The notes: generated from the letters alone by a model not told the origin. 64,000 nucleotides of DNA from IMGVR_UViG_3300042691_055965:62001-126000; one strand, 5' to 3'. Shown: positions 8,418 through 62,658, numbered from the stretch's first letter. Numbers and translations are program-made.

Positions 8418-8461
8418 GGTATTTTCACTACGTATTTTTACGTATATCTTTCTATTTATAG

Positions 8462-8525
8462 TAAAGACACGACCGGCCCATGGTAGATGGGGGTTCCACC
8501 ACAAGGTTCTTCAAGTGTGACTTTA
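8462..8525 (+). ncRNA. Candidate structured 5' leader RNA
   Basis: GC-rich island right after TATTTATA (8453-8460); nested stems TAAAG-ACAC/GTGT-GA-CTTTA, GACC/GGTT, CCCAT/ATGGG. Confidence 0.35.
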
Positions 8526-8553
8526 GTTTTAAACCCACAAAATTAAAGGTCAT

Positions 8554-10545
8554 ATGAAAAAACTTGCATTACTCCTATTTACGTTATTAGTAAATTTTAA
8601 TCTACTTTCACAATTTTGTTCAACAACAGGTCTTGTGAATATGGGTGTTATTACACCAACAGGGACATTCCAAAATGTGTCAAACGCATCATCAGCAAAA
8701 AGGTATTGGAGATTCACGGCAACAGCTGGATGTACTTACGATTTTTCTACTTGTAATAGTGCGTTTACAAATGATACATATTTAAGACTATACTCAACCG
8801 CTACAGGTGGAACTGTATTGGCTCAGAATGACGACAACGGTCCGTTTTGTGGTGGAACAAAGGCATCACTTACTTGGGTTTGTCCTGCAAATGGAACGTA
8901 TTCAATACTTGTTACAAATTATAGTTGTGCAAATCTAAGTGCAACAACAATATTAAGTTACAGAGTCACTTGTGCTCCTGTATATAATCCTTGTTCTTCG
9001 ATTACAACAATTGCAAGTTGTGGAACTAATGTTTCTACAACAATGTCAGGTGGAGGGGCAGGGTGGAATGTCAGTACCTGTGGATTTTCAACACCAGGAC
9101 AAGAAAGAATATTCCAATTCACACCTACTCAGACAGGAACATATACTCTTAATGTGACATCAATCACAGGAGGATACGTTGATTTCTTTTGGAAACCTGC
9201 GTCAGGTGGGTGTGGTAGTACAGGGTGGAACTGTATTGATGACATTAGCTTTACAGGAAGTTTTAATGGAGTAACCCCAATGACATTTACTGCTGGTGTT
9301 ACATATTATATTCTTTTAGACCCTGAAACAACAGGTACATATAATGTAACATTTAATTTGGGTTGTCCAATTGTTGCACCTGCTAATGATTTAATATGTA
9401 ATGCGACTACAATTACTTGTGGTTCATTAGTCGGGGGAACTACTGTGGGTTCAACCCTAACAGGTGCAGGTGAAGGAGGTTCTTGTGGGACCACACAAAC
9501 GACGGGAGGTGTGTGGTATAAAGTTGTTGGCACCGGAGATGTAATGACCGCATCTCTGTGTGTCACAGCTTGGGACAGTAAGATGTCAGTGTTTCAAGGT
9601 TCTTGTACAACACCTGTTTGTGTAGGTGGTATAGATGATAACGGACCGTCGTGTACGGGGACTGCAGCATCGTATTCTTGGACTTCAACACCAGGTGTAA
9701 CATATTTTATACTTGTACACGGATATAGTACAACATCAACTTTTAGTTTAGCATTTACGTGTTCACCTCCACCACCACCAGGTCCTTGTTTGAATACAAC
9801 AGCTTGGAGTGTAGAAAACCTACCAACAACCACAACACCTGACGTAACCACATTGTGTTCAGCGGGTAATGGACAATACACAGATGAATATAGCCAATGG
9901 AATAATGGTGTTGCTGGAGTAACTTATACTGTATTATCAAGTATACCTACTGATTGGGTTACAGTTACAGTTTCAACACCTAACGGAACAGTCGTTTCTT
10001 ATGGTTCATCTCCTTTAGATTTTACGGCATCAATAAATGCAACTTACTATGTTCACATAAATGCAAATGGGTATTGTTTAGATGATGCTAATTGTAGAAA
10101 CGTAACAGTATCAAGAATAAGTGCGTTACCAATAGAATTAATAAGTTTTGATGGTGTTAATAATGGTAGTAGTAACTTATTATATTGGTTAACTGCTTCT
10201 GAACACAACAATAACTATTTTACCTTGGAAAGGTCTAATGATGGTGAAAATTGGGAAGAAGTGACAAAAATAGTTGCCGCAGGGCAATCAACACAAGAAC
10301 TTTCTTATTCATATTCAGATGAAACATTTTCAAGAAATATGATTAATTATTATAGACTTTCACAAACTGACTATGATGGAACTACTGAATTTTTTAACAT
10401 AGTGTCTTTAGATAATACACTTTCAAATAAAAAAGTGGTAAAGTATATTAATATTACAGGACAAGAAATTGATGTTATGTCTGCAACAGGTGTTTATTTC
10501 AAAGTTTATGATGACGGTTCAATGAAAAGAGTTTATAAACAATAA
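8554..10545 (+). CDS. Secreted Cys-rich multidomain protein (PPC-like domains, LPIEL domain, short T9SS-like CTD)
   Basis: Signal peptide; DTYLRLY..NDDNG and PANDLICNA modules; ALPIELISFDG domain; C-terminus similar to 7405-8361. Confidence 0.78.
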   Translation: MKKLALLLFTLLVNFNLLSQFCSTTGLVNMGVITPTGTFQNVSNASSAKRYWRFTATAGCTYDFSTCNSAFTNDTYLRLYSTATGGTVLAQNDDNGPFCGGTKASLTWVCPANGTYSILVTNYSCANLSATTILSYRVTCAPVYNPCSSITTIASCGTNVSTTMSGGGAGWNVSTCGFSTPGQERIFQFTPTQTGTYTLNVTSITGGYVDFFWKPASGGCGSTGWNCIDDISFTGSFNGVTPMTFTAGVTYYILLDPETTGTYNVTFNLGCPIVAPANDLICNATTITCGSLVGGTTVGSTLTGAGEGGSCGTTQTTGGVWYKVVGTGDVMTASLCVTAWDSKMSVFQGSCTTPVCVGGIDDNGPSCTGTAASYSWTSTPGVTYFILVHGYSTTSTFSLAFTCSPPPPPGPCLNTTAWSVENLPTTTTPDVTTLCSAGNGQYTDEYSQWNNGVAGVTYTVLSSIPTDWVTVTVSTPNGTVVSYGSSPLDFTASINATYYVHINANGYCLDDANCRNVTVSRISALPIELISFDGVNNGSSNLLYWLTASEHNNNYFTLERSNDGENWEEVTKIVAAGQSTQELSYSYSDETFSRNMINYYRLSQTDYDGTTEFFNIVSLDNTLSNKKVVKYINITGQEIDVMSATGVYFKVYDDGSMKRVYKQ

Positions 10546-10587
10546 ATTTATAAACTTTCAGATATTTATTTATAAATCCACATTTTA

Positions 10588-11307
10588 ATGGACTTAAATA
10601 ATATAATAAAAAAAGTAGTTAAAGAAGCAAATTCCGATAGGTATGCCGGTTCATATAACGGACCTTTGTCTATGGGTGAAATCGATTGGGGTAAACAAGA
10701 ACTTGGACCTTTCGATACTAAAGTATCTAATTTCTTCAATGCCGAATTAGAATATGATAGTTATGACGGTTCATTAGATATGAGTAAAAAAAAGGCTAAA
10801 AGTCTTGAAACTAAAGCCAAAAAAATATCTTTATATAACAAAAAACACAAAACACCTAACGACGAAGATGGTGGAATAATAAATCAAACACCAGGTAAAA
10901 ACTTGAAGTTTGTTCCATTAAAAGAATGGGTTGATTTGGATTCAATTGTTTTAAATGAAGATTTGGCAGTATGGTTTGGAACAAAAAAGAAAGGTAAAGG
11001 TACTAAACAACCACAAGGTCCTTGGGTTAACATTTGTAGGAAAAAGAAAGGTGGAGGACATCCACCGTGTGGTAGACCTGAAGGTGAATCGAAGGGTTAT
11101 CCTAAATGTAGAGCCGTAGGTGTTGCAAGAAACATGACAGATGTACAAAAAAGAGCAGCATGTCAACAAAAAAGAAAAGCGGAAAAACAAGATACACAAA
11201 CAGGAAAAGGACAAAAACCTGTAATGACATCATATAAACCAAAAAAGAAAAGAACTCAAAAGGAATCTGTTGATTTTCTTGTAAAGAGTATTTTATCTAT
11301 TCTTTAA
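10588..11307 (+). CDS. Hypothetical protein, probable internal head protein with a basic Cys-containing domain
   Basis: Late motif upstream; N-terminal IIKKVVKE; EDLAVWFG...WVNIC...PCGR...YPKCR domain. Confidence 0.6.
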   Translation: MDLNNIIKKVVKEANSDRYAGSYNGPLSMGEIDWGKQELGPFDTKVSNFFNAELEYDSYDGSLDMSKKKAKSLETKAKKISLYNKKHKTPNDEDGGIINQTPGKNLKFVPLKEWVDLDSIVLNEDLAVWFGTKKKGKGTKQPQGPWVNICRKKKGGGHPPCGRPEGESKGYPKCRAVGVARNMTDVQKRAACQQKRKAEKQDTQTGKGQKPVMTSYKPKKKRTQKESVDFLVKSILSIL

Positions 11308-11582
11308 TTTAACTTTTTTTCTAATAATTCATATCTGATTGTTATTGGATTTTCATCAATATCTATTGAATCGTAAGTAATCAAGGTATTTTGATATGTT
11401 CCATAACCACAGAATCCTTCGTCATGTCTGACATTAGTTCCTTTATTAATTTCAATTCTTTTTCTGACTTCATAATTAATTTTTTTATCAGAAGAAAAAA
11501 CTTCAATATCGTGAAAATGAAACCGATTATCAATTTTAGAAAGTCCTCCAGTTCTTAACACATATACTTTTCTGTTCTTCAT
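11304..11582 (-). CDS. Hypothetical protein with its own host-type promoter
   Basis: 92-aa ATG ORF; TATCTTTG -7 box on the minus strand at 11604-11611. Confidence 0.65.
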   Translation of the reverse strand: MKNRKVYVLRTGGLSKIDNRFHFHDIEVFSSDKKINYEVRKRIEINKGTNVRHDEGFCGYGTYQNTLITYDSIDIDENPITIRYELLEKKLN

Positions 11583-11621
11583 ATAAATTTATTTGTTGAA
11601 GAACAAAGATAATAAAATTTT

Positions 11622-12083
11622 CTAACAATACGTACCTGAACAACGTTTTTTTCCGTCAAGACCTTTGATTTTTCCTTTACACACCTGAACTGCGTAACCA
11701 TTTGCATATGCCGAAGGGTAAACATCAAATTTTGCTTTTGCTGCAGATTTACCTCTAGCACATAGTTTTGTTCCTGTTTTTTTTCTACCTTCCATCATTA
11801 CCTCATCATCTTCCATATCCATTTCAGATGACATATCACCACCTTTCATTTCGTTCATTAGAAAATCAAAAACTTGATCCATGTTGTTTTTTGCTTCTGC
11901 AATATGGTCTTGAGCCCAATCATGTCCGTGATCTAAAATTTGTTCAATTTCAGATTTGTCCATCTCCAATAATGTTTCACATTGTCTTTTCATTTGTTCA
12001 AGATTTGAAAAGAACATATATCTTTGTGATTCTTGACGGGTTTCCATCAATACTTTTTTGATGATGTTATTAATATTTTTCAT
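11622..12083 (-). CDS. Hypothetical protein, probable internal head protein
   Basis: N-terminal IIKKVLME; HDWAQDHI segment; C-terminal LC.RG..AAK.KFDVYPSAYANGYAVQVC domain. Confidence 0.65.
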   Translation of the reverse strand: MKNINNIIKKVLMETRQESQRYMFFSNLEQMKRQCETLLEMDKSEIEQILDHGHDWAQDHIAEAKNNMDQVFDFLMNEMKGGDMSSEMDMEDDEVMMEGRKKTGTKLCARGKSAAKAKFDVYPSAYANGYAVQVCKGKIKGLDGKKRCSGTYC

Positions 12084-12086
12084 AAG

Positions 12087-12713
12087 TTAAGAATTTAATC
12101 CTCTAGGTCCACCAAGAACTATCATATTTAGTTGTGTTACATCAGTACCAAAACCGTCAGTCCACACTGGGTTAGGTGGTGTAATTTGATTTATTGTACT
12201 ACCTGTCGCACCACAATCACAACAAATCACACATACGGTTGCTTCTGTATTTGCACTTCTTGGAATATCACTTTCACAATCAGAACAGCTCACAAATGGT
12301 CCGGCTTCAGGAAAATAATTGTTTTCATCAGGTAAATCTTCTTTTCCATCTATAAATGTAGCACAAAAGAATACTTCATTTTCAGAAAATTGGAATACCT
12401 CATCTTTTCTTGGGTTACTACCATAAACTTCACAAAAACCACTTATACTGTATAAAAAAGTTGTCCCGTCACAGTTTTGAAATTCCAAAGATTGTAAAGT
12501 ACCGCCCGTGAAACAATCACAACAATCAGTATAAGGGTGTGAATAAGAATATAACGGTATGGGTTCATCTTCAGTTACAGATATAACTGTACCACAAATT
12601 TCTGATTCTTCGCCAAAGTTAAAACCAATAACTTCAAGAGGTGATAGTGTTGTAGATGCCGATACAATATACTCTAAACCATCTAAACAACCTTCTACAA
12701 TATAATTTGCCAT
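12087..12713 (-). CDS. Cys-rich virion protein (CxxC repeat family)
   Basis: Two CxxC-ending modules plus a C-terminal domain shared with 12745-14760; late motif at 12727-12734. Confidence 0.6.
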   Translation of the reverse strand: MANYIVEGCLDGLEYIVSASTTLSPLEVIGFNFGEESEICGTVISVTEDEPIPLYSYSHPYTDCCDCFTGGTLQSLEFQNCDGTTFLYSISGFCEVYGSNPRKDEVFQFSENEVFFCATFIDGKEDLPDENNYFPEAGPFVSCSDCESDIPRSANTEATVCVICCDCGATGSTINQITPPNPVWTDGFGTDVTQLNMIVLGGPRGLNS

Positions 12714-12744
12714 TTTTTCTTTTTTATATAAATATCATTATGTT

Positions 12745-14760: not shown

Positions 14761-14762
14761 AA

Positions 14763-16247: not shown

Positions 16248-16268
16248 TTGTTTTTTATATATAAATAC

Positions 16269-17849: not shown

Positions 17850-18045
17850 TATCTATTCTTTTTTTGTATTCATCTAAAAGTTTATTGTAACTATTTTCAG
17901 TTGCGTCCAAATGGTGTGTAAGTTTCATTATTAAATCCTTTGTTTTGTTAAAATCTTCAATTAAAAAATCCATAACACCAATTATATCTTTATTTGATGC
18001 ATTTTTATAATCTTTCAATATTTCAAGTACGTCTTCTGATTTCAT
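17842..18045 (-). CDS. Small coiled-coil hypothetical protein
   Basis: Overlapping start/stop with its neighbours. Confidence 0.6.
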   Translation of the reverse strand: MKSEDVLEILKDYKNASNKDIIGVMDFLIEDFNKTKDLIMKLTHHLDATENSYNKLLDEYKKRIDNA

Positions 18046-18047
18046 TA

Positions 18048-20000: not shown

Positions 20001-20002
20001 AA

Positions 20003-20374
20003 TTAATCTAAAGTATATTTTTGATCACTACTTTTATCGACATCTCTTTTGATTAAATTTTGAATTATGTCGTCATCAACATCATTTAAAGTGAAAGATT
20101 CATCTTTACTACTATTACTCTTTTCCCATATTGTGGATTGAAGTTTAGAAAGACTTAATTTTTTTTCTATTGTGTCGTTTATGATTTTTTGTTGTTCTTT
20201 GATAATTGGACCGATAACAGTCATATCTTCGGCATCTTTCAAAAGTGAAAGCATTTTGTTTTGAATTCTTAAAGCGGTTGCTCTTTGTTCAACTAGTTCA
20301 TTATAAATTTCTTGCATCAAACTTAACACAGAATCTTTGTTAAGTGTAATTTCTTTTTTTCTTGTCCTGTTCAT
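20003..20374 (-). CDS. Coiled-coil hypothetical protein
   Basis: Late motif TATTTATT at 20378-20385 (minus strand). Confidence 0.6.
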   Translation of the reverse strand: MNRTRKKEITLNKDSVLSLMQEIYNELVEQRATALRIQNKMLSLLKDAEDMTVIGPIIKEQQKIINDTIEKKLSLSKLQSTIWEKSNSSKDESFTLNDVDDDIIQNLIKRDVDKSSDQKYTLD

Positions 20375-20398
20375 AATAATAAATATTTATTTTATCAT

Positions 20399-21145
20399 TT
20401 ATGAATTGTGAATTCTTTTGAGTGTGTCTAAATATAAAGTTTTGTATTTTTTTAAGTAAATTCTAATTTCTTTAGTGTTTAGATTAGTCATTTCTCTTAA
20501 CGATAACAATACAATGTTTTTGTTGAATTTATTATTATCATTACCAATGAAAATATTTCCATAATTGTCAAATAATTCAATAAGTGCGTGACCTAGTTTT
20601 AATTCATTTTCATTTTCTATTTTATTGTGAACGTAAAGTCTTAAGTCACTCAAAAATGTATCTATAACTTTTTCGGCATCAATTTTTTCAAATTCCAAAT
20701 AATAAATCATATCAGGACGATTTTCTAATGTTGATGAAATATCTTCATAAGAAATTTTTCTATTTGTGTCTTTCTGATCTTTTTGGATTTGCCCCATAAG
20801 ATAGTTTTTACAAATAGTACCAAAATAAGAATACGCCTTCTTATTTTTTGCCGGTTTAAATTTATCAATTTTTGTCATTAGAAAAGAATGTGTGTCTGAA
20901 TGATTATCTTCAAAATTCATATCTCTTCTATATAATTTGTATCTTCGGATAATTGACTCTATCATTTTGTTCAATGGTTCCCGAAGACACGTATTATAGA
21001 TAAATTCTTTTTCTTCACGAGAGTTAGATAAAAGGTAATCTTTAACTGCCTGCTCTTCACGAACGTCAAAGTAATTATTTTTTTTTACTTTATTCGTCTT
21101 TTTAAATTCTATACTGGTTGTTTCATTTTCACCTGAAATAAACAT
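20399..21145 (-). CDS. Phage late-transcription sigma factor (gp55-like)
   Basis: KNNYF N-terminus; region 2-like KFKP...KAYSYFGTICKNY, comparable to gp55 F.P..S.NPFAYFTQI. Confidence 0.7.
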   Translation of the reverse strand: MFISGENETTSIEFKKTNKVKKNNYFDVREEQAVKDYLLSNSREEKEFIYNTCLREPLNKMIESIIRRYKLYRRDMNFEDNHSDTHSFLMTKIDKFKPAKNKKAYSYFGTICKNYLMGQIQKDQKDTNRKISYEDISSTLENRPDMIYYLEFEKIDAEKVIDTFLSDLRLYVHNKIENENELKLGHALIELFDNYGNIFIGNDNNKFNKNIVLLSLREMTNLNTKEIRIYLKKYKTLYLDTLKRIHNS

Positions 21146-21954: not shown

Positions 21955-21963
21955 AATATTTTT

Positions 21964-23022: not shown

Positions 23023-23027
23023 TTTAT

Positions 23028-24677: not shown

Positions 24678-24690
24678 TATGAAATTTTTC

Positions 24691-39254: not shown

Positions 39255-39289
39255 TTGAAATTTGTTTTAAGTAAAATATAAGTTTAATA

Positions 39290-39318
39290 AAATAAAAAAT
39301 CCACCTATTTGGTGGATT
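39290..39318 (-). terminator. Rho-independent terminator (minus strand)
   Basis: AATCCACC-TATTT-GGTGGATT with an A run on its left, which reads as a U run on the minus strand. Confidence 0.8.
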
Positions 39319-39324
39319 CTATTT

Positions 39325-41831: not shown

Positions 41832-41859
41832 TATAAATACTTCAACTAAACTATTTATC
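41832..41859. promoter_or_regulatory. Back-to-back late promoter motifs
   Basis: TATTTATA on the minus strand (41832-41839) and TATTTATC on the plus strand (41852-41859), each facing a divergent gene. Confidence 0.7.
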
Positions 41860-43820: not shown

Positions 43821-43849
43821 ACTTTATATTTATATAATAAAATTAAAAA

Positions 43850-48220: not shown

Positions 48221-48258
48221 TTTTCTTTACACTTATTTTCTTTTATAAACTTAATTCA

Positions 48259-49080: not shown

Positions 49081-49107
49081 TAAAATAAAACATAAAAAAA
49101 TAAAAAA

Positions 49108-49350
49108 ATGAAAGAAGAATTAACACAAGAACAAATCCAAAGTAGTATTTTAGCAGCATTTGATTCTGTTAACTTAATAAACAATTTGTTGACAACAGAA
49201 AAAAATGAGGAAAATAAAAACACAGTAAAACGTAATTTTGAACATTTAGAAGTTATGATGAGTAAAGATTGGTTTTCTGAAGCATTATCTACAGAACAAA
49301 AAAACGATATTGATTTATCAATAGAAAACGGTAAATTATTTATTTCATAA
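49108..49350 (+). CDS. Small helical protein, possible fibre chaperone or accessory
   Basis: AAFDSVNLIN...RN.EHLE.M..KDW; located next to the fibre gene. Confidence 0.5.
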   Translation: MKEELTQEQIQSSILAAFDSVNLINNLLTTEKNEENKNTVKRNFEHLEVMMSKDWFSEALSTEQKNDIDLSIENGKLFIS

Positions 49351-49372
49351 TTTAACTTCTTACATTTTTCTT

Positions 49373-50251: not shown

Positions 50252-50353
50252 AATATTTTTCTTTTTTTATTTACTTTTTTAACTGATTTTAAATTAATTT
50301 TCTTTCCCATCAACAATTACGTATAAAATAGATATTTATAGTAAAAAGAAAAA

Positions 50354-53473: not shown

Positions 53474-53475
53474 TT

Positions 53476-54042: not shown

Positions 54043-54053
54043 AATTAAAAAAA

Positions 54054-55013: not shown

Positions 55014-55024
55014 AAATAAGAAAT

Positions 55025-55267
55025 ATGGTAAAAATAATTAAAAGAACAACAGACAATAAATTTTTACAATCATTAGAATTGGATACTTGGGTGGATAACT
55101 CTAACGATGCATTAATTATGACATTTAAAGAATGTGAAACAATAAAAGAAAATCTTTTAAATACATATTCCCAAGAACAGATAAAAGAAATGATAGATTA
55201 CTCAAAAAGTAAACCTGTTTCAAAAGAAGAAAGAAAAGAACTTTTAAATTTATTGAAAAACAAATAA
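55025..55267 (+). CDS. Hypothetical protein
   Basis: ORF within the operon. Confidence 0.55.
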   Translation: MVKIIKRTTDNKFLQSLELDTWVDNSNDALIMTFKECETIKENLLNTYSQEQIKEMIDYSKSKPVSKEERKELLNLLKNK

Positions 55268-55277
55268 CAAAAAATAA

Positions 55278-55631
55278 ATGGAATTTTTTATTCAACAAGG
55301 AGCTTCTTTGCCAATTTTAAAAATGGATGTAGTAAAAGATGGTAGAACAGACGCTGCAAATAATTTCTATTCTGTCTTATATAATTCAAACATAAGATTT
55401 TCAATGAAGAATATTGACAATGGTATTCAGAAAATCTTCATGAATCCAGCCTATGTTGTACAAAAGTTTAATATCCAACCAAACGCACCAAAAGAATACT
55501 ATATTTACTACAAATGGAATGCAAATGATACTAAAATAAAAGGAAGATACGTTGGTGAATTTTGTATACTGTTACCTAACGGAGAACTAATATCACCAAT
55601 TAGAGAAAATCTTTATATCAATATTGTTTGA
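55278..55631 (+). CDS. BppU-like baseplate/fibre-anchoring Ig domain protein
   Basis: FFIQQG.SLP.L...YY.W...DT...G.Y.GEF. Confidence 0.55.
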   Translation: MEFFIQQGASLPILKMDVVKDGRTDAANNFYSVLYNSNIRFSMKNIDNGIQKIFMNPAYVVQKFNIQPNAPKEYYIYYKWNANDTKIKGRYVGEFCILLPNGELISPIRENLYINIV

Positions 55632-55658
55632 CAAGAGTAAGAATTAATCTTATATTTA
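55627..55658 (+). promoter_or_regulatory. Bacteroidota sigma70-type promoter for the DNA polymerase gene
   Basis: TTTG (55627-55630), 20-nt spacer, TATATTTA (55651-55658); consensus is TTTG-N19-21-TAnnTTTG. Confidence 0.7.
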
Positions 55659-55717
55659 AGACGAAGGTAAATGTTACCCATGTGTAACAGCTAATAGACC
55701 AAACTTAAAATATATTT

Positions 55718-58618
55718 ATGGTAGCACAAGAAGAAATCGAACGCTTTTTATTAGGTGAAGACGAAGAAAAATATATCGTATCTATCGAATACGATTACAA
55801 AACATCCAAAATTTTTAAAGTAATACAGGACCCTGTAAAAGGTAAACTTTTACGAATGGATACTTTTATTCCGTTTGCTTGGGTTGGTGATTTAAGAGGT
55901 AAAAATTTTTATAAAAATAATAAAGATGCACAAAAACGTGCAATGTCTGAAAATGGTATCATCATTGAAAAACTTCAAGATCACGGTGATGAAAGACTTA
56001 AAACGGGTTTAACATTTATTGTTAAAACCACAAAAACATATTCTAACCTTATAAACTTTTTCAAAGGTGGTGGGCTTGATCCTTGGGGGAGGGACAATTC
56101 AGATTGTATTACTGTTTTATCTCCAGTGGAACAATACTTAATTCAAAAAAACAAAAGACTTTTTAAAGGGTTTGAAGAATACGATGAAATCCATAGATTC
56201 GTATTCGATATTGAAACAACGGGACTTGATCCGAAATCAAGTAGTATATTCCTTATTGGAATGAAAGACAATCGTGGTTTTTTGAAATTATTATCTGCAC
56301 AAAATCCTGATGAAGAAAGAAAGATGATTGTCGAATTTTTCAAAACAATCGACGAATTAAAACCTTCACTTATTGGTGGTTACAACTCAGCATTCTTTGA
56401 CTTTCCTTTTATTCTAAAAAGAGCAGAAATATTAAATCTAAACATTAAAAAAATAACGAAAACATTAAACCCCGATTATACTTTAAAACAAAAAGAAGGA
56501 ATATTGAAATTGGCAAATGAAATGGAACCCTATACACAAACACAAATGTGGGGTTACAACATTATAGATATAGCACACGCAGTAAGAAGGGCACAAGCAA
56601 TCAATTCAGATATTAAAAGTTGGTCTCTGAAGTATATTACCAAATTTATTGAAGCCGAAAAACAAAATCGTGTTTATGTTGAAGGAGATAAGATTGGTAA
56701 AATTTATTTTGACAATGAGGATTATTGGATGAATAAAGAAAACGGAGCCTACAAAAAAGTTGGTTTGGATGAAAATATAGATGAAGTTTGTGGTAGAAGA
56801 ACTGATGTCTATGATAAAACAACAGGTTCCAAAATAATTGAACAATACTTGGACGATGACTTGTATGAAACAATGATTGTTGACGAGCAATTTAATCAAG
56901 CAAATTTCTTGTTGTCAAAACTTGTACCAACAACATACGAACGTCTTTCTACTATGGGTACGGCAACTCTTTGGAAAATGATTATGTGTGCTTGGTCATA
57001 CAAAAACAATTTGGCATTACCTAAAAAGAAAGAAAAACGTAAATTTACGGGAGGACTTTCTAGGTTGGTTCAGGTTGGGTATTCAAGAAACGTATTAAAA
57101 CTTGACTACTCTTCACTATACCCTTCCATTCAGTTGGTACATGATGTGTTTCCTGCTTGTGATGTTACAGGTGCAATGAAAAGTATGTTAAAGTATTTCC
57201 GTGATACTCGTATTAAATATAAAAACTTGGCGGGGGAATACAAATCAATAGATTTAAAAGCATCAATTTCATACGATAGAAAACAATTACCAATTAAAAT
57301 CTTTATCAACGCATTCTTTGGTTCGTTATCTGCTCCTCACGTATTTCCTTGGGGTGATATTGATATGGGTGAACAGATTACTTGTACAGGTAGACAGTAT
57401 CTTCGTCAGATGATTATGTACTTTATGAAACGTGGATATGTTCCATTGGTGATGGACACGGATGGTGTAAACTTCGAAACCCCTGAAGATAGAGAAAACT
57501 ATAAGTACATCGGTAAAGGACTTAATGGTTTAGTTAAAGAAGGTAAAGAATATGTGGGTGCTGAAGCGGATGTTGCAGAATACAATGACTTATTTATGCG
57601 AAATGAAATGGGTCTTGATATTGATGGTGTATGGCCGGCAACAATCAACGTGGCACGTAAAAACTATGCACTTCTTACAGATAAAGGTAAAGTTAAACTT
57701 ACTGGTAACTCTATTAAGTCTAAAAAACTTCAAACATATGTTGCAGAGTTTTTGGATAAAGGATTAAGAATGTTACTTGATGGTAAAGGTGGTGAGTTTT
57801 TAGATTTTTATTATGAGTATGTAAGTAAAATTTATAATAAAAAAATTCCGTTAGCAAAAATAGCAAACAAATCCCGTGTTAAACAATCAATAGATGATTA
57901 TAAAGTACATATTACAAAAACAACAAAGGCGGGAAGTTTAATGTCTAGACAGGCACATATGGAACTTTTAATGAATGCAGGAAAAAAACCAGGTTTAGGA
58001 GATACTATCTATTATGTTAATAATGGAGAAAAGAAATCACACGGTGATGTTCAGAAAAAAACCACAAAAATGACAAAAAAACAAATAGAAGATTATATGA
58101 ATATTCATGGAGAGGTTCCTCCTGAAATGTTATCTAAAAGTGAAGTGATTCTAAATTGTTATTTGATTGATGAAAAAGAAATTGAAAACAATCCTGATTT
58201 ATTAGGTGAGTATAATGTTCCAAGATACTTGGCGGCATTTAACAAAAGAATTGAGCCGTTACTTGTTGTTTATAGTCCTGATATTAGAAAAGATATTTTA
58301 ATTGAAGATCCTAAAGATCAACCAATTTTTACAAAGTCACAAACTGTATTGGGTAGAGGATTTCCGATGAAAGAAAAGGATCAAGACAATTTAGATGAGG
58401 TGTTAACGCTATCTGATATGGAAATTAAATTTTGGCAGTCAGTTGGAATCGATCCGTACTATATGTACATAGATGATACCATTAATTTAGTTGATGAAAG
58501 TAGAGTTAAAAATAATAAAGAGTTGATGGAAAAAGAAATAAAAGTGTCAAAGGTTGATGAAGATGAATTTTTTGAGTTTGATACTGAAGCGGATTTAACT
58601 TCTTTAATTTTTGATTAA
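55718..58618 (+). CDS. Family B DNA polymerase
   Basis: ExoI FDIET, ExoII YN...FD.PFI, motif A DYSSLYPS, motif B K...NAFFG, motif C DTDG, KNYA. Confidence 0.93.
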   Translation: MVAQEEIERFLLGEDEEKYIVSIEYDYKTSKIFKVIQDPVKGKLLRMDTFIPFAWVGDLRGKNFYKNNKDAQKRAMSENGIIIEKLQDHGDERLKTGLTFIVKTTKTYSNLINFFKGGGLDPWGRDNSDCITVLSPVEQYLIQKNKRLFKGFEEYDEIHRFVFDIETTGLDPKSSSIFLIGMKDNRGFLKLLSAQNPDEERKMIVEFFKTIDELKPSLIGGYNSAFFDFPFILKRAEILNLNIKKITKTLNPDYTLKQKEGILKLANEMEPYTQTQMWGYNIIDIAHAVRRAQAINSDIKSWSLKYITKFIEAEKQNRVYVEGDKIGKIYFDNEDYWMNKENGAYKKVGLDENIDEVCGRRTDVYDKTTGSKIIEQYLDDDLYETMIVDEQFNQANFLLSKLVPTTYERLSTMGTATLWKMIMCAWSYKNNLALPKKKEKRKFTGGLSRLVQVGYSRNVLKLDYSSLYPSIQLVHDVFPACDVTGAMKSMLKYFRDTRIKYKNLAGEYKSIDLKASISYDRKQLPIKIFINAFFGSLSAPHVFPWGDIDMGEQITCTGRQYLRQMIMYFMKRGYVPLVMDTDGVNFETPEDRENYKYIGKGLNGLVKEGKEYVGAEADVAEYNDLFMRNEMGLDIDGVWPATINVARKNYALLTDKGKVKLTGNSIKSKKLQTYVAEFLDKGLRMLLDGKGGEFLDFYYEYVSKIYNKKIPLAKIANKSRVKQSIDDYKVHITKTTKAGSLMSRQAHMELLMNAGKKPGLGDTIYYVNNGEKKSHGDVQKKTTKMTKKQIEDYMNIHGEVPPEMLSKSEVILNCYLIDEKEIENNPDLLGEYNVPRYLAAFNKRIEPLLVVYSPDIRKDILIEDPKDQPIFTKSQTVLGRGFPMKEKDQDNLDEVLTLSDMEIKFWQSVGIDPYYMYIDDTINLVDESRVKNNKELMEKEIKVSKVDEDEFFEFDTEADLTSLIFD

Positions 58619-58947
58619 TCCATTTTCAAACCATCACTACTTAGTATGTACCAAAAATCACCAATTAGTTTGAATTCTACACATGCTCCTTTATTAAGTT
58701 CTATGATGTCAAACTCTTCATCTATTTTTTTGTCACTTGTGATGTTAATTACCGTAAGTGCTTTTACGATAACGTGGTCAGATGTTTTAGAATCCAAATA
58801 AAGGTTACATTCTGAAATACCTTTTACTACTATGAATTTTTCACCATTAGTATCATATTGACTATTACTTACAATTACAGATTCAGAAGATAAAGTTTCT
58901 TTTCCGTTTACAGTTCTTGTAATAGGTGTTGATTTGAATATTGCCAT
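58615..58947 (-). CDS. Small beta-rich protein downstream of the neck gene
   Basis: Start revised to MAIFKS (58947); C-terminal WYILSSDG. Confidence 0.55.
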   Translation of the reverse strand: MAIFKSTPITRTVNGKETLSSESVIVSNSQYDTNGEKFIVVKGISECNLYLDSKTSDHVIVKALTVINITSDKKIDEEFDIIELNKGACVEFKLIGDFWYILSSDGLKMD

Positions 58948-58954
58948 AAAGTTT

Positions 58955-60073
58955 TTAAATAACATTATAAGGACTTGTAAACGCTCTGAACTTTAAAGCC
59001 TTGTTCATATTTTCCGCTTGTAACCCTTTAATTTCCCATTGTTTTTCAGGTCTTAATCTTTCAAGTCTTAATTTTAGTTCTTCCCACAATATTGTTTTTT
59101 CATCTTTTGCTTCCGTTTGAAGTGAAGTGTATTCTAAGGTAAGTTCTGAATCCGGAGTCTTTAAGTTACCGCTATACTTACCTCTTACTCTTGCCAATGT
59201 TTCTTTACAATATGCGGTAAACCATCGTCTTACCCATGTCTTAGCAGGTGAATTTAATTCGTCCCAAGATATTTCATCTATTGGAACATCTGATGGTAAT
59301 CTTACGATGTCGGGATTTTTCTTCAAACAATCCTCCCTATCGAAAGTATCGTAATACCAATACCATACACGATATTGATTTCTTTGAATGTTTCCAAAAT
59401 CAAACTTTCCTCCAGGTACATTCATTAAGTGTATTGCTTTTTTTCCTTCAGGAAGTGCTGTTACCCTATATGTTAAATCACCTGTTATGATTCTTCTTTT
59501 CATTTGAATGTCTGCCATTCTTAAAAGAATGTCAAATGCTGGTGTGATAAAATAATTACCAGTAGTTCCCATTTGTGAAAAACCGGCACCACCACCAAGT
59601 CCAATACCACCAAAACCACCAAAACCACCCATAAACGGATCAAAATATGCTGCGTCAAGTTCAGGTCTTGCGAACCATAATAGTTCATTAAGTTCCCTTC
59701 CTGCAGGTATTTCATATATTTGTTGACCTGGTATTAAATCAATATAATCTTTTTCTAATACAGAATCACCACCAGCTTGAAGTCCAACTATCTTTGAATA
59801 TGCGTAAGTGTATTGGGTTTCCCAATCCATACTTCTTGTAGTAAAAGCCCTTGTTACAGATTGTTCATCCAAATTTAAACCATATAATGATGACCATTGA
59901 CTTTCAATAAGCCAATCATTAACGTGTTGTGCATAATCTTGTATGGAAAGTTCAAGAAGTGAATCCATCATTTCGTCTTCAAGTTCTACTGAACGTAATG
60001 GTGCACCCAAAAGATTTTTAATTCTTTTGTAAAGTTTACTTCTTTCTGGTTCTGTAATTATGGTAGTTGTCAT
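58955..60073 (-). CDS. Neck/head-completion protein (T4 gp13-like)
   Basis: LGAP...VEL, WVRR..TA.CKE.L..VRGKY, L..EA..E...L.EEL; late motif at 60085-60092. Confidence 0.8.
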   Translation of the reverse strand: MTTTIITEPERSKLYKRIKNLLGAPLRSVELEDEMMDSLLELSIQDYAQHVNDWLIESQWSSLYGLNLDEQSVTRAFTTRSMDWETQYTYAYSKIVGLQAGGDSVLEKDYIDLIPGQQIYEIPAGRELNELLWFARPELDAAYFDPFMGGFGGFGGIGLGGGAGFSQMGTTGNYFITPAFDILLRMADIQMKRRIITGDLTYRVTALPEGKKAIHLMNVPGGKFDFGNIQRNQYRVWYWYYDTFDREDCLKKNPDIVRLPSDVPIDEISWDELNSPAKTWVRRWFTAYCKETLARVRGKYSGNLKTPDSELTLEYTSLQTEAKDEKTILWEELKLRLERLRPEKQWEIKGLQAENMNKALKFRAFTSPYNVI

Positions 60074-60111
60074 AGACTTTTTTGTATAAATATTTTGCTA
60101 AATCAAAATAT

Positions 60112-60825
60112 TCAATACTTGTTTCTTTTAATTTGGGTGGTATACAAATCATTGATAAATCCCCAATTTACAACTTTCCAAAAATTGGAAGTGTATTTAT
60201 CCCTTTGATTTTTGTATTTTAAATAATATGCGTGTTCCCAAACATCTAAGCCTAATATTGGATAACCTCTTTCTTTTTCCGTATTCATTAGTGGGTTGTC
60301 TTGATTTGCAGTTGTTACTATTTTTAATCTACCATTATCTTTCAAAATTAACCATACCCAACCTGAACCAAACCTATTTTTTGCTGATTCTTCAAATTCT
60401 TCTTTAAAATTGTCAAATGAACCAAAAGTTTTTTCAATTTTTTCTTTAATCGGTCCTTCAAATTTTTGTTTTTTTGGTGATAACATTTTCCAAAATAAAG
60501 CATGATTAAATGCTCCACCTCCATTGTTTTTTACTTTGTCATTAAATTTGGATATACTTTTAATGATTTGTTCTAAATCTAAATCTTTACCTTTAACTTT
60601 TTCAAGTTCAACATTCAACTTATCAACATAACCTTTATAGTGTTTACTATAATGTGTTTTCATTGTTTCTGCATCAATAAAACTTTCAAGTGAATCGTAT
60701 TCGTATGGAAGTTTGTCTATACTTATTTTTTTGATTTCAGAAATGATATCTTGTTTTTTTGGTGAAACAACGTCAAGTTTAGATTCAATGATATCTATTT
60801 TTTTATGTAAACTTTTTAATAGCAT
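60112..60825 (-). CDS. sodA: Mn/Fe superoxide dismutase (Mn-type signature) with an N-terminal extension
   Basis: LPYEY..LE, H..KH..GY, NNGGG..NH, FGSGWVWL, NQD, DVWEHAYY. Start revised to 60825. Confidence 0.92.
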   Translation of the reverse strand: MLLKSLHKKIDIIESKLDVVSPKKQDIISEIKKISIDKLPYEYDSLESFIDAETMKTHYSKHYKGYVDKLNVELEKVKGKDLDLEQIIKSISKFNDKVKNNGGGAFNHALFWKMLSPKKQKFEGPIKEKIEKTFGSFDNFKEEFEESAKNRFGSGWVWLILKDNGRLKIVTTANQDNPLMNTEKERGYPILGLDVWEHAYYLKYKNQRDKYTSNFWKVVNWGFINDLYTTQIKRNKY

Positions 60826-60836
60826 ATAAATAAATA

Positions 60837-62600
60837 TCACCTACTATACGAAATCATATTTAACATTTCTTCTATTGTTGACGCATCATCTAACATATCA
60901 TCACCCATTACGGTTGAAATGATTTTTTTCTTTCTATTAAGTATATCATATATTACACCTTCTATAGTGTTTTCAAATAGGGGATAATAAACCGAAGTTG
61001 ACTTTTTTTGTCCGATTCTATGTGATCTATCTTCAGCTTGTGCGTGTTCAGCAGGAACAAATGATAAATCATTCATGATTACTGCTTCAGCGGAAGTCAA
61101 TGTGATACCAACTCCCGCAGCTTTCAAGTTACCAACAAATACTTTTATTTTATCGTTTTCTTGAAAGTCGTCAACTGCCTTTTGTCTATGTGGTTTTGAA
61201 CATGAACCATCTAAATAAACAGCTTCTTTTCCGAAGTGTTCATATATAGTTCGTAACGTATCTGTAAAATTCGTAAATATAATTACTTTTTTTCCTTGTT
61301 CAATAATGTTTTCTGCAAGTTCTATGGTGTTTTTAATTTTTTCTTCAGCCAACACTTTTCTTACTTTCATTAATTTACCAAACTGAATTGTAAGTGACGA
61401 AGATTCTTCGGAGTTACCATCATACCAATTATAATATTCGCCCATCAATTCTTCATATTCTTTTGATTTTAATCTTAAATAAACGGGTGTAATAATTTTA
61501 TCGGGTAAATCTAAAACATCTTCTTTTAGTCTTCTTAAGATATGTGTTTGTGTTCGTTCCCTTAATTCATCAAGATTAGATGCTCCCGTTACGTTCCAAA
61601 CTTTTCTATTACCCACACTAAATTGATATCCGTTACAATACCTTTTAGCATATGCCATCCAATTTGCAGCAACAGGACTTTCAACAAGTTTTAATAAATT
61701 ATAATAGTTCATCGGTCTTGATGTCATTGGTGTTCCTGTTAAAAGCCAAACCCTATCTAGTTTGTCACACAAGTCATTGACTATTTTTGTTCTTTGAGCT
61801 TGTGGATTCGAAATCATGTGAGCTTCATCCATTATTACCAAATCAAACTTAGTATTTAAAATCACTGATTCATCTTTCTTTTTCGGATCGTGAAAGTTTT
61901 TTAAAATGTCGTAGTTAATAATCACAAAATCAGATTCAGTTGAAAATTTTTTTCCTTCTGAAATATATACACTTCTATCTGAATAATTTTCTATTTCTCT
62001 TTGCCAATTTATTTTAAGTGATGCGGGACAAATAATTAAAATTTTCTTTGCTCCTGATTCAAGAGCAGATATAATTGTTGATGTTGTTTTACCAAGTCCC
62101 ATGTCATCTGCCAAAATAAACTTTTTGTTACCTACCAATTTTTGAATGGCTTCTTTTTGGTGTTCCATTGGAAGTCTATGGTTATACTTTCCGTAATCGA
62201 CAACAACGTTTTTAACTTCATTGTCTTTTATTAATGCCGACTTTGGTAACCAAAAATCATGAATAGTTTCACCACTCCAAATTTTTCCCCAAATATGATA
62301 TGATTTGTCTTTTTCTACCAACAATTTTTCAACATATATTTCTGTTGGTTCTTTTGTATACATTTTATCTTCTTTAAGTTTTTTTCCAAAATAAGAATCT
62401 AACTTAACCCATTTTTTTGCAACTTTCGGGGTTGTATTTTGATAGTTGATAATATACTCAGCTTGACTTCTTGTGGGAGTAAAAGACTTACTATTTAGTT
62501 TTTTGTTCTTAAGATTCAATATAAAATTATTAGACCCATTATAGTCTTCTAATATTTCTAATGATTTTTTTTCTGGTGTAGATGATACTAATTCTTCCAT
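60837..62600 (-). CDS. SNF2-family (SMARCAL1/HARP-like) helicase
   Basis: LADDMGLGKT, DEAH, LTGTP, LRRLK, GVGITLT, QAEDR.HRIGQ. Start revised to MEELV (62600). Confidence 0.92.
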   Translation of the reverse strand: MEELVSSTPEKKSLEILEDYNGSNNFILNLKNKKLNSKSFTPTRSQAEYIINYQNTTPKVAKKWVKLDSYFGKKLKEDKMYTKEPTEIYVEKLLVEKDKSYHIWGKIWSGETIHDFWLPKSALIKDNEVKNVVVDYGKYNHRLPMEHQKEAIQKLVGNKKFILADDMGLGKTTSTIISALESGAKKILIICPASLKINWQREIENYSDRSVYISEGKKFSTESDFVIINYDILKNFHDPKKKDESVILNTKFDLVIMDEAHMISNPQAQRTKIVNDLCDKLDRVWLLTGTPMTSRPMNYYNLLKLVESPVAANWMAYAKRYCNGYQFSVGNRKVWNVTGASNLDELRERTQTHILRRLKEDVLDLPDKIITPVYLRLKSKEYEELMGEYYNWYDGNSEESSSLTIQFGKLMKVRKVLAEEKIKNTIELAENIIEQGKKVIIFTNFTDTLRTIYEHFGKEAVYLDGSCSKPHRQKAVDDFQENDKIKVFVGNLKAAGVGITLTSAEAVIMNDLSFVPAEHAQAEDRSHRIGQKKSTSVYYPLFENTIEGVIYDILNRKKKIISTVMGDDMLDDASTIEEMLNMISYSR

Positions 62601-62658
62601 TGCACTATAAATAAAAATAGTAAATTCTAATAAATAATCAATTAAAGTATTTATAGAT

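What the first reader, a model, noticed from the sequence alone, without database searches (positions are those of the whole stretch)
8453..62655. Late promoter TATTTAT(A/T): the T4 late promoter read backwards, with a cognate gp55-like sigma
Sense-strand TATTTATW precedes operon-leading genes at 8453 (+), 10563/10567 (+), 12727 (-), 16260 (-), 20378 (-), 41832 (-), 43827 (+), 50333 (+), 60085 (-), 60829 (-), 62606 (-) and 62648 (+), with variants TATTTATC at 41852 and TACTTATA at 7381. TATTTATA is the exact reverse complement of the T4 gp55 promoter TATAAATA. It often lies only 3-20 nt from the ATG, implying near-leaderless mRNAs. The gp55-like gene at 20399-21145 is the obvious reader. The motif also classes SOD, the SNF2 helicase and some T9SS cargo as late genes.
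Basis: partly seen in the sequence, partly recalled or inferred. Interest (0 to 1): 0.6.

Follow-up and report, generated by a model that had tools for sequence, protein, structure and literature searches.

The report
Phage promoter motif TATTTAT with gp55-like sigma
An uncultured freshwater T4-like jumbo phage, probably of Bacteroidota, places an invariant TATTTAT box a few bases upstream of about a third of its genes; it is most likely a variant T4-type late promoter read by a phage gp55-like sigma factor and often giving leaderless mRNAs.

Summary
The motif is real and functional-looking. The raw window count is not enriched (41 TATTTATW against 35±6 in shuffles), but the placement is. Genome-wide, co-directional spacers hold 54 sense and 8 antisense copies, against about 5 expected. 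The box precedes 20 of 32 operon-leading genes, 4-6 or 12-19 nt from the ATG.

It is invariant at one orthologous site in 67 of 67 distinct related sequences, and is kept in relatives whose sigma is only 39-48% identical.

The genome is a T4-like phage (Gp20 portal, Gp23 capsid, T4-type terminase, sheath). The 20399-21145 product has a sigma region-2 domain, and its top (statistically tied) match among 48,161 solved chains is T4 gp55.

"Read backwards" is a red herring. In the same orientation TATTTATA matches T4's TATAAATA at 6 of 8 positions and keeps the two adenines that gp55 buries in deep pockets.

"Late" is unproven. The box also heads helicase, SOD and sugar operons, including the operon that holds the sigma gene. 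Outside the window there is a second, RpoD/RpoS-like sigma, and two other promoter-like types occur.

Verdict: a new variant of a known kind.

The parts
20399..21145 (-). Gene for a 248-aa gp55-like sigma (P0001). It has a sigma region-2 domain (residues about 25-130) and a helical C-terminal domain (148-248) of unclear kinship.
   Evidence: Pfam Sigma70_r2 is found in 47 of 69 homologues; P0001 itself scores 0.0073, below threshold. A profile search of PDB gives SigA 0.0024 and T4 gp55 0.069. hhalign against T4 gp55 gives E 1.5e-4 over residues 15-126 against 8-124. The AF2 model has pLDDT 91. The top match among 48,161 chains is T4 gp55 7d7d_F: Z 10.9, 117 residues aligned. The C-terminal domain is inconclusive.
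20378..20385 (-). TATTTATT box 4 nt upstream of the ATG of the 123-aa gene next to the sigma gene. This is the best-conserved copy.
   Evidence: The heptamer is invariant in 67 of 67 distinct orthologous spacers, with spacing 4 to 7 nt. It is also present in relatives whose sigma is 39-48% identical, one of them a 52.5% GC contig.
20003..20374 (-). Highly conserved 123-aa protein (P0272) with an acidic C-terminal tail; function unknown. Its N-terminus is conserved from the first ATG.
   Evidence: No relation to T4 gp33 by hhalign. No PDB, Pfam or NCBIfam match.
8453..8460 (+). TATTTATA box after a terminator-like hairpin, 94 nt upstream of the 8554 ORF (a signal-peptide protein).
   Evidence: The leader fold is not significant.
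10563..10574 (+). Two overlapping boxes, 18 and 14 nt upstream of the 10588 ORF.
   Evidence: The box is kept before the orthologue in L013 and L015.
12727..12734 (-). TATTTATA box 14 nt upstream of the 12713 start.
16260..16267 (-). TATTTATA box 13 nt upstream of the 16247 start.
   Evidence: Conserved in L013 and L015 while the flanks diverge.
41832..41839 (-). TATTTATA box 14 nt upstream of the first gene of the 26-gene minus-strand sugar operon, whose last gene is the sigma gene.
41852..41859 (+). TATTTATC box 12 nt upstream of the 41871 ORF; the divergent partner of the 41832 box.
43827..43834 (+). TATTTATA box 16 nt upstream of the 1456-aa ORF.
49337..49344 (+). TATTTATT box 29 nt upstream of the 49373 ORF.
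50333..50340 (+). TATTTATA box 14 nt upstream of the 1039-aa ORF.
60085..60092 (-). TATTTATA box 12 nt upstream of the 60073 start.
60825..60836 (-). Two overlapping boxes, 4 and 0 nt upstream of the ATG (60825) of the Fe/Mn superoxide dismutase gene.
   Evidence: SOD domains.
62606..62636 (-). Two boxes (62606 and 62629), 6 and 29 nt upstream of the SNF2-family helicase ATG at 62600.
62648..62655 (+). TATTTATA box 4 nt upstream of the 62659 ORF; the divergent partner of the 62606 box.

Best explanation
TATTTAT(A/T) is the -10-like element of a phage-specific promoter class in a T4-like jumbo phage, probably of Bacteroidota.

Host core RNA polymerase carrying the phage's gp55-like sigma (window 20399-21145) would melt the box. 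It would read it as single-stranded non-template DNA in the way T4 gp55 reads TATAAATA, burying the two adenines four bases apart (positions 2 and 6) in pockets. There is no -35 hexamer.

Transcription would start a few bases downstream. The class with 4-7 nt between box and ATG would then yield leaderless or nearly leaderless mRNAs beginning at the A of ATG. The class with 12-19 nt would yield short A-rich leaders.

Shown: the motif, its strand and position bias, its conservation, the T4-like genome, and the sigma-2/gp55-like fold.

Inferred: promoter activity, the start sites, which sigma reads the box, and the timing. The class is better called phage-sigma-dependent (post-early) than strictly late.
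For: Placement in this genome:
- Sense-strand and positional enrichment against AT-matched backgrounds.
- Over-representation before operon-leading genes, including both sides of divergent junctions where a promoter must exist.
- The seven bases are fixed; no -35 hexamer; only a no-G/C pair 15-16 nt upstream.
- Sense copies are depleted inside coding sequence: 46 against 70 +/- 7 in synonymous-codon shuffles.

Conservation:
- It is the top upstream heptamer in 80 related loci: 162 of 1055 genes against 15 expected.
- 67 of 67 distinct orthologous spacers keep it, although spacer length and sequence vary. Spacing is 4-7 nt, T precedes the ATG in 59 of 67, and the downstream protein is conserved from that ATG.
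- It is present in 5 of 8 loci with 32-48% identical sigma. In a 52.5% GC contig it is the only copy in 10 kb. Two further loci have TATTTAA or TATTTAC there and one has none.

Genome type: T4 portal 4.5e-75, T4-type terminase, Gp23 4e-64, sheath and baseplate J.

Sigma:
- Region 2 by Pfam and PDB profile.
- hhalign to T4 gp55 E 1.5e-4, co-linear from the N-terminus, with gp55 F86 and Y97 matched by the conserved F96 and Y107.
- T4 gp55 is the top of 48,161 structural comparisons, Z 10.9.

T4 comparison:
- T4 gp55 flips A-12, A-9 and A-8 (PMC7892883). The motif keeps A at the positions equivalent to -12 and -8, and differs from TATAAATA only at positions 4-5.
- T4 late promoters are likewise a single tightly kept -10 box without a -35, about 50 per genome and on both strands. 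Variant consensus sequences are known in T4 relatives (PMC2988020).
Against: - No transcript 5' ends: no RNA run holds this sequence.
- With strict T4 spacing (box at -13 to -6), the start for the 4-nt class would fall on the G of ATG. The start must therefore lie 2 nt closer to the box than in T4.
- The sigma gene sits at the end of an operon headed by the same box, which needs a separate kick-start.
- A second, canonical RpoD/RpoS-like sigma is encoded in the genome and conserved in relatives.
- The gp55 match is weak by sequence (0.069 in PDB; hhalign probability 51%). The structural Z is within 1 of other sigma-2 hits.
- No T4-type clamp-binding LDFL tail in the sigma. No gp33 homologue was found. 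Only a faint gp45 hit, E 0.05.
- The C-terminal domain might be a degenerate sigma-4 (Z about 5).
- One relative (L018, 37% identical sigma) lacks the box next to its sigma gene.
Confidence: 0.6

Rival explanations
1. The box is a promoter element, but it is read by another sigma: the phage's RpoD/RpoS-like sigma (genome 195721-196536, outside the window) or the host primary sigma.
For: - A canonical sigma with regions 1.2, 2 and 4 is encoded (Pfam 8e-17 and 2e-16; SigA 1e-42). It is conserved at 67-83% identity in 4 of 5 large related contigs.
- The box shares 4 of 6 specified positions with the Bacteroidota -7 element TAnnTTTG (from my own knowledge of that consensus).
- With a preceding TA, the box reads TATATT, a fair -10 hexamer.
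Against: - There is no -35 or -33 partner, although the RpoD-like sigma has a good region 4.
- Canonical sigmas need A-11 and T-7. In the box the base four positions after the invariant A is an invariant A, the pattern T4 gp55 reads.
- In the alternative register, the base before the box would have to serve as A-11, and it is A in only 45 of 72 sites.
- Separate host-type (TTTG-N19/20-TAnnTTTG) and E. coli-type (TTGACA-N16/17-TATAAT) sites exist in other spacers and could serve those sigmas.
Confidence: 0.17
2. The box acts at the RNA level, as a translation-initiation enhancer or an RNA-processing or protein-binding site upstream of start codons in an organism without Shine-Dalgarno use. It is not a promoter.
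For: - It is strand-specific.
- The distance to the ATG is very short and tightly kept (4-7 nt at the best-conserved site).
- Many copies sit inside co-directional gene strings.
Against: - Only about 30% of genes have it, and almost none of the translationally coupled ones (2 of 85 with gaps under 5 nt).
- It is enriched at operon heads and on both sides of divergent junctions.
- Distances range from 0 to 94 nt in two modes, not one fixed spacing.
- Several copies follow terminator-like hairpins.
- T at -1 with A at +1 fits the pyrimidine/purine rule for start sites.
Confidence: 0.1
3. It is a by-product of AT-rich intergenic composition and has no function.
For: The raw window count equals the shuffle expectation. 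Intergenic DNA is 75% A+T.
Against: - A 7:1 sense-to-antisense ratio, and 3- to 10-fold excess over order 1-3 Markov models of the spacers themselves.
- Invariance in 67 of 67 orthologous spacers whose flanks vary.
- Presence in a 52.5% GC relative.
Confidence: 0.01

Closest known systems
Bacteriophage T4 late promoter (TATAAATA at -13 to -6) with gp55, gp33 and the gp45 sliding clamp
   Same: - A single, tightly kept AT-only -10-like box with no -35.
- Tens of copies per genome, on both strands.
- A phage sigma that is essentially a region-2 domain and heads the list of structural matches to T4 gp55 (Z within 1 of other sigma-2 domains).
- T4-type portal, capsid, terminase and sheath in the same genome.
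- 6 of 8 box positions identical in the same orientation, including the adenines at the T4 -12 and -8 positions.
   Different: - The central AA is TT.
- The box sits much closer to the start codon (modal 4 nt), implying leaderless mRNAs and a start site about 2 nt nearer to the box than in T4.
- The sigma is 248 aa with an extra helical C-terminal domain and no LDFL clamp-binding tail.
- No gp33 homologue and no clear gp45 homologue were found in the 76%-complete record.
- The host is probably Bacteroidota.
In-silico late-promoter consensus sequences of other T4-related phages (KVP40, 44RR, S-PM2; Aeh1 with a changed -13/-12), reviewed in PMC2988020
   Same: A T4 relative whose late-type box departs from the T4 octamer, inferred from upstream-sequence conservation.
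   Different: The change is at the centre of the box rather than at its 5' edge. I found no report of TATTTAT as a phage promoter in three paper searches; a fourth, on T4-like late promoters in Bacteroidetes, was judged from its two titles and abstracts only.
Bacteroidota primary-sigma promoters (-33 TTTG, -7 TAnnTTTG); from my own knowledge of that consensus
   Same: Begins with TA, has T at position 5 and T at position 7, and sits in an AT-rich context. Genuine examples of the host type occur elsewhere in this genome.
   Different: Position 6 is an invariant A instead of T. Position 8 is A or T instead of G. There is no TTTG about 20 nt upstream.
Leaderless mRNAs (lambda cI; many genes of Actinobacteria and Deinococcus); from my own knowledge
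   Same: The promoter box is placed so that the transcript would begin at the A of the start codon.
   Different: Here this is inferred from spacing alone, in a phage of a phylum that lacks Shine-Dalgarno use. It would apply to roughly a third of the box-bearing genes.

Membership tests
T4 gp55 late-sigma family | Sigma region-2 homology domain | tested here: met
   Pfam Sigma70_r2 in 47 of 69 homologues. All PDB profile hits below E = 0.1 are sigma factors. Sigma-2 domains align at rmsd 2.5 A over 96 residues, Z 9-10. T4 gp55 is the top of 48,161 chains, Z 10.9 with 117 residues aligned.
T4 gp55 late-sigma family | Sequence homology to gp55 itself | tested here: inconclusive
   hhalign E 1.5e-4 but probability 51%. 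PDB profile E 0.069. No PHROG or Pfam gp55-type hit.
T4 gp55 late-sigma family | Residues of the DNA-base pockets (gp55 F86, H95, Y97, T99) | tested here: inconclusive
   In the hhalign register, F86 aligns with F96 and Y97 with Y107; both are conserved in the family. H95 aligns with Y105 and T99 with G109, which differ (PMC7892883).
T4 gp55 late-sigma family | No sigma region 4 | tested here: inconclusive
   No Sigma70_r4 by Pfam in any of 69 members. No PDB sequence hit and no Foldseek hit for residues 148-248. However, sigma-4 chains appear at Z 5.1-5.5, tied with unrelated folds.
T4 gp55 late-sigma family | C-terminal sliding-clamp-binding motif (SLDFL-type) | tested here: not met
   T4 gp55 ends with SLDFLYEAND and gp33 with TLDFLL. 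P0001 ends with LYLDTLKRIHNS, which has no such motif and is not conserved in the family.
T4 gp55 late-sigma family | Partners gp33 and gp45 encoded in the genome | tested here: inconclusive
   The neighbouring 123-aa protein is unrelated to gp33. The gp45 Pfam model gives only E 0.05 at window 62872-62985. The record is 76% complete.
T4 gp55 late-sigma family | Encoded by a phage of the T4 superfamily | tested here: met
   Portal_T4 4.5e-75 and Terminase_6N. Gp23 4e-64. Sheath and Baseplate_J.
T4-type late promoter | The octamer TATAAATA | tested here: not met
   The consensus here is (A)TATTTAT(A/T), which matches at 6 of 8 positions in the same orientation.
T4-type late promoter | A single -10-like box without a -35 element | tested here: met
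   No conserved hexamer upstream in 72 sites; only G/C avoidance 15-16 nt upstream of the box.
T4-type late promoter | Box at -13 to -6 relative to a mapped start; active late and dependent on DNA replication | not testable with these tools
   No RNA runs hold the sequence. The phage is uncultured.
T4-type late promoter | Heads the structural (late) genes | tested here: inconclusive
   The box heads the sheath, baseplate, terminase/portal and capsid operons. It also heads a DnaB-like helicase, an SNF2 helicase, SOD, a histidine kinase and the sugar operon. The DNA polymerase gene has an E. coli-type promoter-like site instead; a TATTTAT copy overlaps its ATG but cannot serve it as a promoter.
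Bacteroidota sigma-A promoter | TTTG at -33 and TAnnTTTG at -7 | tested here: not met
   A is invariant at box position 6, there is no G at position 8, and there is no upstream TTTG. True examples occur in other spacers.

The most novel reading that the evidence does not exclude
A very abundant, uncultured clade of T4-like jumbo phages runs a three-tier sigma cascade. Homologues of its sigma fill more than 7,900 protein clusters, from freshwater, marine and gut metagenomes.

Tier 1: host sigma-A on a few Bacteroidota-type promoters.
Tier 2: a phage RpoD/RpoS-like sigma on E. coli-type TTGACA/TATAAT promoters, which the host's own polymerase would ignore.
Tier 3: a gp55-like sigma with re-tuned base pockets on TATTTAT boxes.

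The TATTTAT boxes are placed so that many mRNAs are leaderless, a transcription-coupled answer to translation without Shine-Dalgarno pairing.
Probability: 0.3. Interest if true: 0.65.

Novelty: new variant of a known kind. Interest (0 to 1): 0.5.

Why it matters
It would extend the T4 late-transcription paradigm to a large, environmentally abundant phage group that has not been studied experimentally. It would also give a natural specificity variant of gp55: AA changed to TT at the centre of the box, with the two deep-pocket adenines kept. That variant can be tested against the solved T4 complex.

A fixed promoter box also gives a practical annotation tool for operon starts, true start codons and likely leaderless genes in hundreds of metagenomic jumbo-phage contigs.

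Two phage sigmas alongside three promoter-like types would make the gene-expression programme of these phages directly testable.

Tried and rejected
- RNA evidence: the single search for sequencing runs returned only DNA-type metagenome runs, mostly freshwater. I did not use read laying, because contigs of DNA runs cannot show starts.
- Known RNA families: none in the window. The 94-nt leader after the 8453 box folds no better than shuffles.
- PHROGs gave nothing for the sigma or its neighbours. Megablast against phage records found no match.
- gp33 candidate: the conserved 123-aa neighbour is unrelated to T4 gp33 and to any solved chain.
- C-terminal domain of the sigma: no sequence or Foldseek match. 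Z of about 5.8 at best in the wide search, with sigma-4 chains tied with unrelated folds. Left open.
- Covariation between sigma residues and the box: the core KAYSY.GT motif is the same in the one relative that lacks the box. No conclusion.
- The search for related loci with the 69-sequence alignment failed for lack of a conserved stretch. With the high-GC homologue P0143 it found nothing.
- Terminator-then-box pairs: only 9 of 72 sites against 5 in the control. Weak support only.
- E. coli-type promoters at up to 2 mismatches are not enriched genome-wide: 216 against 223 expected. Only the set with up to 1 mismatch is concentrated in spacers.
- Complex prediction was not used. The host polymerase is unknown and no binding claim rests on it.


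Full report
**What the window is.** The window is bases 62,001-126,000 of a single 229,188-bp contig with 31% G+C. It is an IMG/VR virus record that CheckV puts at 76% complete. It encodes:
- a T4-type portal (Portal_T4, 4.5e-75) and a T4-type large terminase;
- a Gp23-type major capsid protein at window 1614-3425 (4e-64);
- a tail sheath and a baseplate-J protein;
- a family-B DNA polymerase at window 55718-58618.

It also carries CHU_C type-IX-secretion signal domains and SprB repeats, which point to a Bacteroidota host. Near-identical DNA occurs in freshwater, lake and other environmental metagenome runs from 13 studies, and in no RNA run. So this is an uncultured T4-like jumbo phage.

**The observation.** All the listed TATTTATW copies are at the stated places. 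Counted naively, the octamer is not enriched in the window: 41 against 35.0 +/- 5.8. Its placement is what departs from chance.
- With a simple set of 230 ORFs, 69 genes have TATTTAT within 60 nt upstream on the sense strand, against 5.2 expected. It is by far the most enriched heptamer.
- In the 8.8 kb of spacers between co-directional genes there are 54 sense and 8 antisense copies. Markov models trained on those same AT-rich spacers expect 5.3 (order 1) to 16.4 (order 3), and no simulation reached 54.
- Operon-leading genes carry it in 20 of 32 cases, against 51 of 197 internal genes (p = 1e-4). Tightly coupled genes almost never carry it (2 of 85).
- Inside coding sequence the sense copy is depleted: 46 against 70 +/- 7 in synonymous-codon shuffles.
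- In the window, 18 of 52 copies lie in the 3% of DNA that is intergenic, and 16 of those face a gene.

**Anatomy.** In 72 intergenic sites the seven bases are fixed by construction of the set. The base before is A in 45 sites, and the base after is A or T in 66. There is no -35-like hexamer. The only other signal is near-absence of G/C at the two positions 15-16 nt upstream of the box (1 of 72 each). The distance from box to ATG is bimodal: 4-6 nt (25 sites) and 12-19 nt (24 sites).

**Conservation.** The protein at 20399-21145 has more than 7,900 related protein clusters in metagenomes.
- In 80 IMG/VR loci with 62-82% identical homologues, TATTTAT is again the top upstream heptamer: 162 of 1055 genes against 15 expected.
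- The spacer between the sigma gene and the next gene occurs in 67 distinct versions. These differ in length (11 to 46 nt) and sequence. All 67 contain the heptamer, at 4 (48), 5 (11), 6 (7) or 7 (1) nt from the ATG.
- At that site T precedes the ATG in 59 of 67 versions. The downstream 123-aa protein is conserved from that ATG.
- Eight more distant loci (sigma 32-48% identical) were read. Five keep the exact heptamer at that place. These include a 52.5% G+C contig, where it is the only copy in 10 kb, and a TARA ocean contig, where it is the only plus-strand copy in 6.7 kb. Two have TATTTAA or TATTTAC there, and one has none. In the cyanophage Mel-JY01, the gene after its partial homologue (34% identity over 40% of the query) is also preceded by a copy, which overlaps the annotated ATG.

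This is strong evidence for function and for an old link between this gene family and the box.

**The candidate reader.** The 248-aa product has no Pfam or PHROG hit at default thresholds. The evidence that it is a sigma, and gp55-like, is as follows.
- 47 of 69 diverse homologues match Sigma70_r2; P0001 itself scores 0.0073.
- A family profile finds only sigma factors below E = 0.1 in PDB: SigA at 0.0024 and T4 gp55 at 0.069.
- hhalign against T4 gp55 gives E 1.5e-4 (probability 51%). The alignment is co-linear from the N-termini, residues 15-126 against 8-124.
- The AF2 model is confident (pLDDT 91).
- In an unbiased comparison with 48,161 solved chains the first hit is T4 gp55 in the late-transcription complex: 7d7d_F, Z 10.9, 117 of 137 residues aligned. 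Region-2 domains of many sigmas follow at Z 8-10. Z values within 1 count as tied, so this says "sigma-2 fold, gp55 at least as good as any" and no more.
- Residues 148-248 form a separate four-helix domain. It has no sequence or Foldseek match. It gives only noise-level matches, Z about 5, among them sigma-4 domains.
- The T4 clamp-binding tail (SLDFL) is absent.

**Why "backwards" is the wrong frame.** TATTTATA is indeed the reverse complement of TATAAATA. That follows from both being TAT..ATA. Read in the same direction, they differ only at positions 4 and 5. In the T4 open complex gp55 reads the non-template strand. It buries A-12 and A-8 in deep pockets and A-9 in a shallow one; Y97 stacks on A-12, and F86, H95 and T99 also line the pockets (PMC7892883).

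The box here keeps A at the two deep-pocket positions (its positions 2 and 6) and changes the -10 and -9 positions. In the hhalign register, gp55 F86 and Y97 correspond to the conserved F96 and Y107. H95 and T99 correspond to Y105 and G109. This is compatible with kept deep pockets and an altered shallow one, but that is inference.

A canonical sigma needs A then T four bases apart. The box has A then A, which is the gp55 pattern.

**Start sites.** No data exist. Suppose TATTTA is the analogue of the -10 hexamer. Then the 4-7 nt spacings place the A of ATG 6-9 nt after the hexamer. That is within the range bacterial polymerases use (my own knowledge), and it comes with the favoured pyrimidine at -1 and purine at +1. 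The mRNAs of that class would be leaderless.

Strict T4 spacing would put +1 on the G of ATG. The start would therefore have to lie 2 nt nearer the box than in T4. The 12-19 nt class would have short A-rich leaders.

**Is it "late"?** The box heads the operons containing the sheath, baseplate-J, terminase/portal and capsid genes, and many very large virion-like proteins. It also heads:
- a DnaB-like helicase;
- the SNF2 helicase and SOD in the window;
- a GAF-PAS histidine kinase and a T9SS-signal protein;
- the 26-gene sugar-biosynthesis operon whose last gene is the sigma gene itself.

The DNA polymerase gene has no box positioned to act as its promoter; one copy overlaps its ATG. It is instead preceded by TTGACA-N17-TATATT (window 55628-55656). 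The class is therefore best called phage-sigma-dependent. Classing SOD, SNF2 or T9SS cargo as late genes is not justified yet.

Outside the window, at genome 195721-196536, lies a 271-aa canonical sigma with regions 1.2, 2 and 4 (Pfam 8e-17 and 2e-16; SigA 1e-42). It is conserved at 67-83% identity in four of five large related contigs.

About eight spacers, at 45-52 kb and 196-222 kb, hold full Bacteroidota-type promoters, TTTG-N19/20-TAnnTTTG. Six spacers hold E. coli-type promoters with at most one mismatch, all facing a gene. That is about eight times the density found in coding DNA.

These observations suggest, but do not show, a cascade: host sigma, then the RpoD-like phage sigma, then the gp55-like sigma. 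They also make the RpoD-like sigma a rival reader of the box. The lack of a -35 and the A...A pattern argue against that.

**Comparison and novelty.** T4 has about 50 late promoters. They keep the octamer tightly, have no -35, and lie on both strands. In-silico consensus sequences in other T4 relatives are the same or differ at -13/-12 (PMC2988020). I found no report of TATTTAT as a phage promoter in three paper searches; a fourth, on T4-like late promoters in Bacteroidetes, returned two papers whose titles and abstracts do not mention it and which I did not open.

I class this as a new variant of a known kind: the T4 late-promoter/gp55 scheme with a changed box, much closer apposition to start codons, a longer sigma without the clamp-binding tail, and a second phage sigma in the same genome.

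My confidence that the box is a promoter element is about 0.8. My confidence that the 20399-21145 product reads it is about 0.6.

Noticed in passing
L008:17721-18536 (+), genome 195721-196536, outside the window: A second phage-encoded sigma of 271 aa, RpoD/RpoS-like, with regions 1.2, 2 and 4. It lies downstream of a host-type TATATTTG element (genome 193466) and of a TATTTAT box (genome 195077). It is conserved at 67-83% identity in four of five large related contigs.
   Followed up: partly
window 55628-55656 (+); also genome 60024, 148358 (perfect TTGACA-N16-TATAAT) and 218700: E. coli-type -35/-10 promoters with at most one mismatch, in spacers and all facing a gene; one precedes the DNA polymerase gene. 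This is unexpected for a Bacteroidota host, and they are a possible target of the RpoD-like phage sigma. Their density is about 8 times that in coding DNA, but the numbers are small (6 against 14).
   Followed up: partly
genome 45723, 51733, 196542, 196978, 208023, 221432, 221486 (L003, L008, L009, L010): Full Bacteroidota-type promoters (TTTG-N19/20-TAnnTTTG) in spacers before small genes. The two at 196542 and 196978 are near-identical copies. These are likely early promoters for host RNA polymerase.
   Followed up: partly
window 20003-20374 (-): A 123-aa protein that is more conserved than the sigma next to it. It has a helical body and an acidic C-terminal tail, and always follows the best-kept box at 4-7 nt. 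It is not related to T4 gp33 by profile comparison; function unknown.
   Followed up: partly
15-16 nt upstream of each box (72 sites genome-wide): G/C is almost excluded at two adjacent positions (1 of 72 each), with T preferred. This is a possible weak upstream contact point, and there is no explanation for it yet.
   Followed up: no
window 21145-41818 (-): A 26-gene, 21-kb operon at 26-30% G+C. It contains a family-2 glycosyltransferase, and in relatives it holds NeuB, epimerases, aminotransferase, methyltransferases and PhoH. The sugar cassette varies between relatives. The sigma gene is its last gene, and its start codon overlaps the end of the glycosyltransferase gene.
   Followed up: partly
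window 39255-39324 (-): A terminator-like hairpin followed by TTATATTTTAC, inside the long operon and upstream of the 39254 start. This could be an internal promoter that expresses the sigma gene independently of the 41832 box.
   Followed up: no
window 3628-7257 and 7405-10545 (+): Paralogous secreted-type proteins. Genes 3628, 5811 and 6661 are related to the CHU_C/SprB protein at genome 6775; genes 7405 and 8554 are paralogues that share the leader end AAAGGTCATAT. They are preceded by long spacers with G+C-rich stretches rather than by boxes; only the 8554 gene has a box, at 8453.
   Followed up: no
window 55713-55719 (+); L105:4730-4736: TATTTAT overlaps the ATG (TATTTATG) at the DNA polymerase start. 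It does the same at the gene after the partial sigma homologue in Microcystis phage Mel-JY01. Either chance or a start site inside the gene.
   Followed up: no
L018 (53.5% G+C relative; sigma 37% identical): There is no TATTTAT next to the sigma gene. Instead, AAACGAC recurs just upstream of several start codons. This may be a different promoter or leader signal in that branch.
   Followed up: partly
whole contig: Auxiliary genes unusual for a phage: Fe/Mn SOD (window 60112-60825), two GAF-PAS histidine kinases (genome 9105-12277), a ClpB-like double AAA ATPase (genome 47997-50045), glutamine synthetase (genome 213961-215190), a SET-domain protein (genome 216449-218695) and an N6/N4 DNA methylase (genome 194179-195075). 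IMG/VR labels the record a provirus; I saw no bacterial flank but did not look for an integrase.
   Followed up: no
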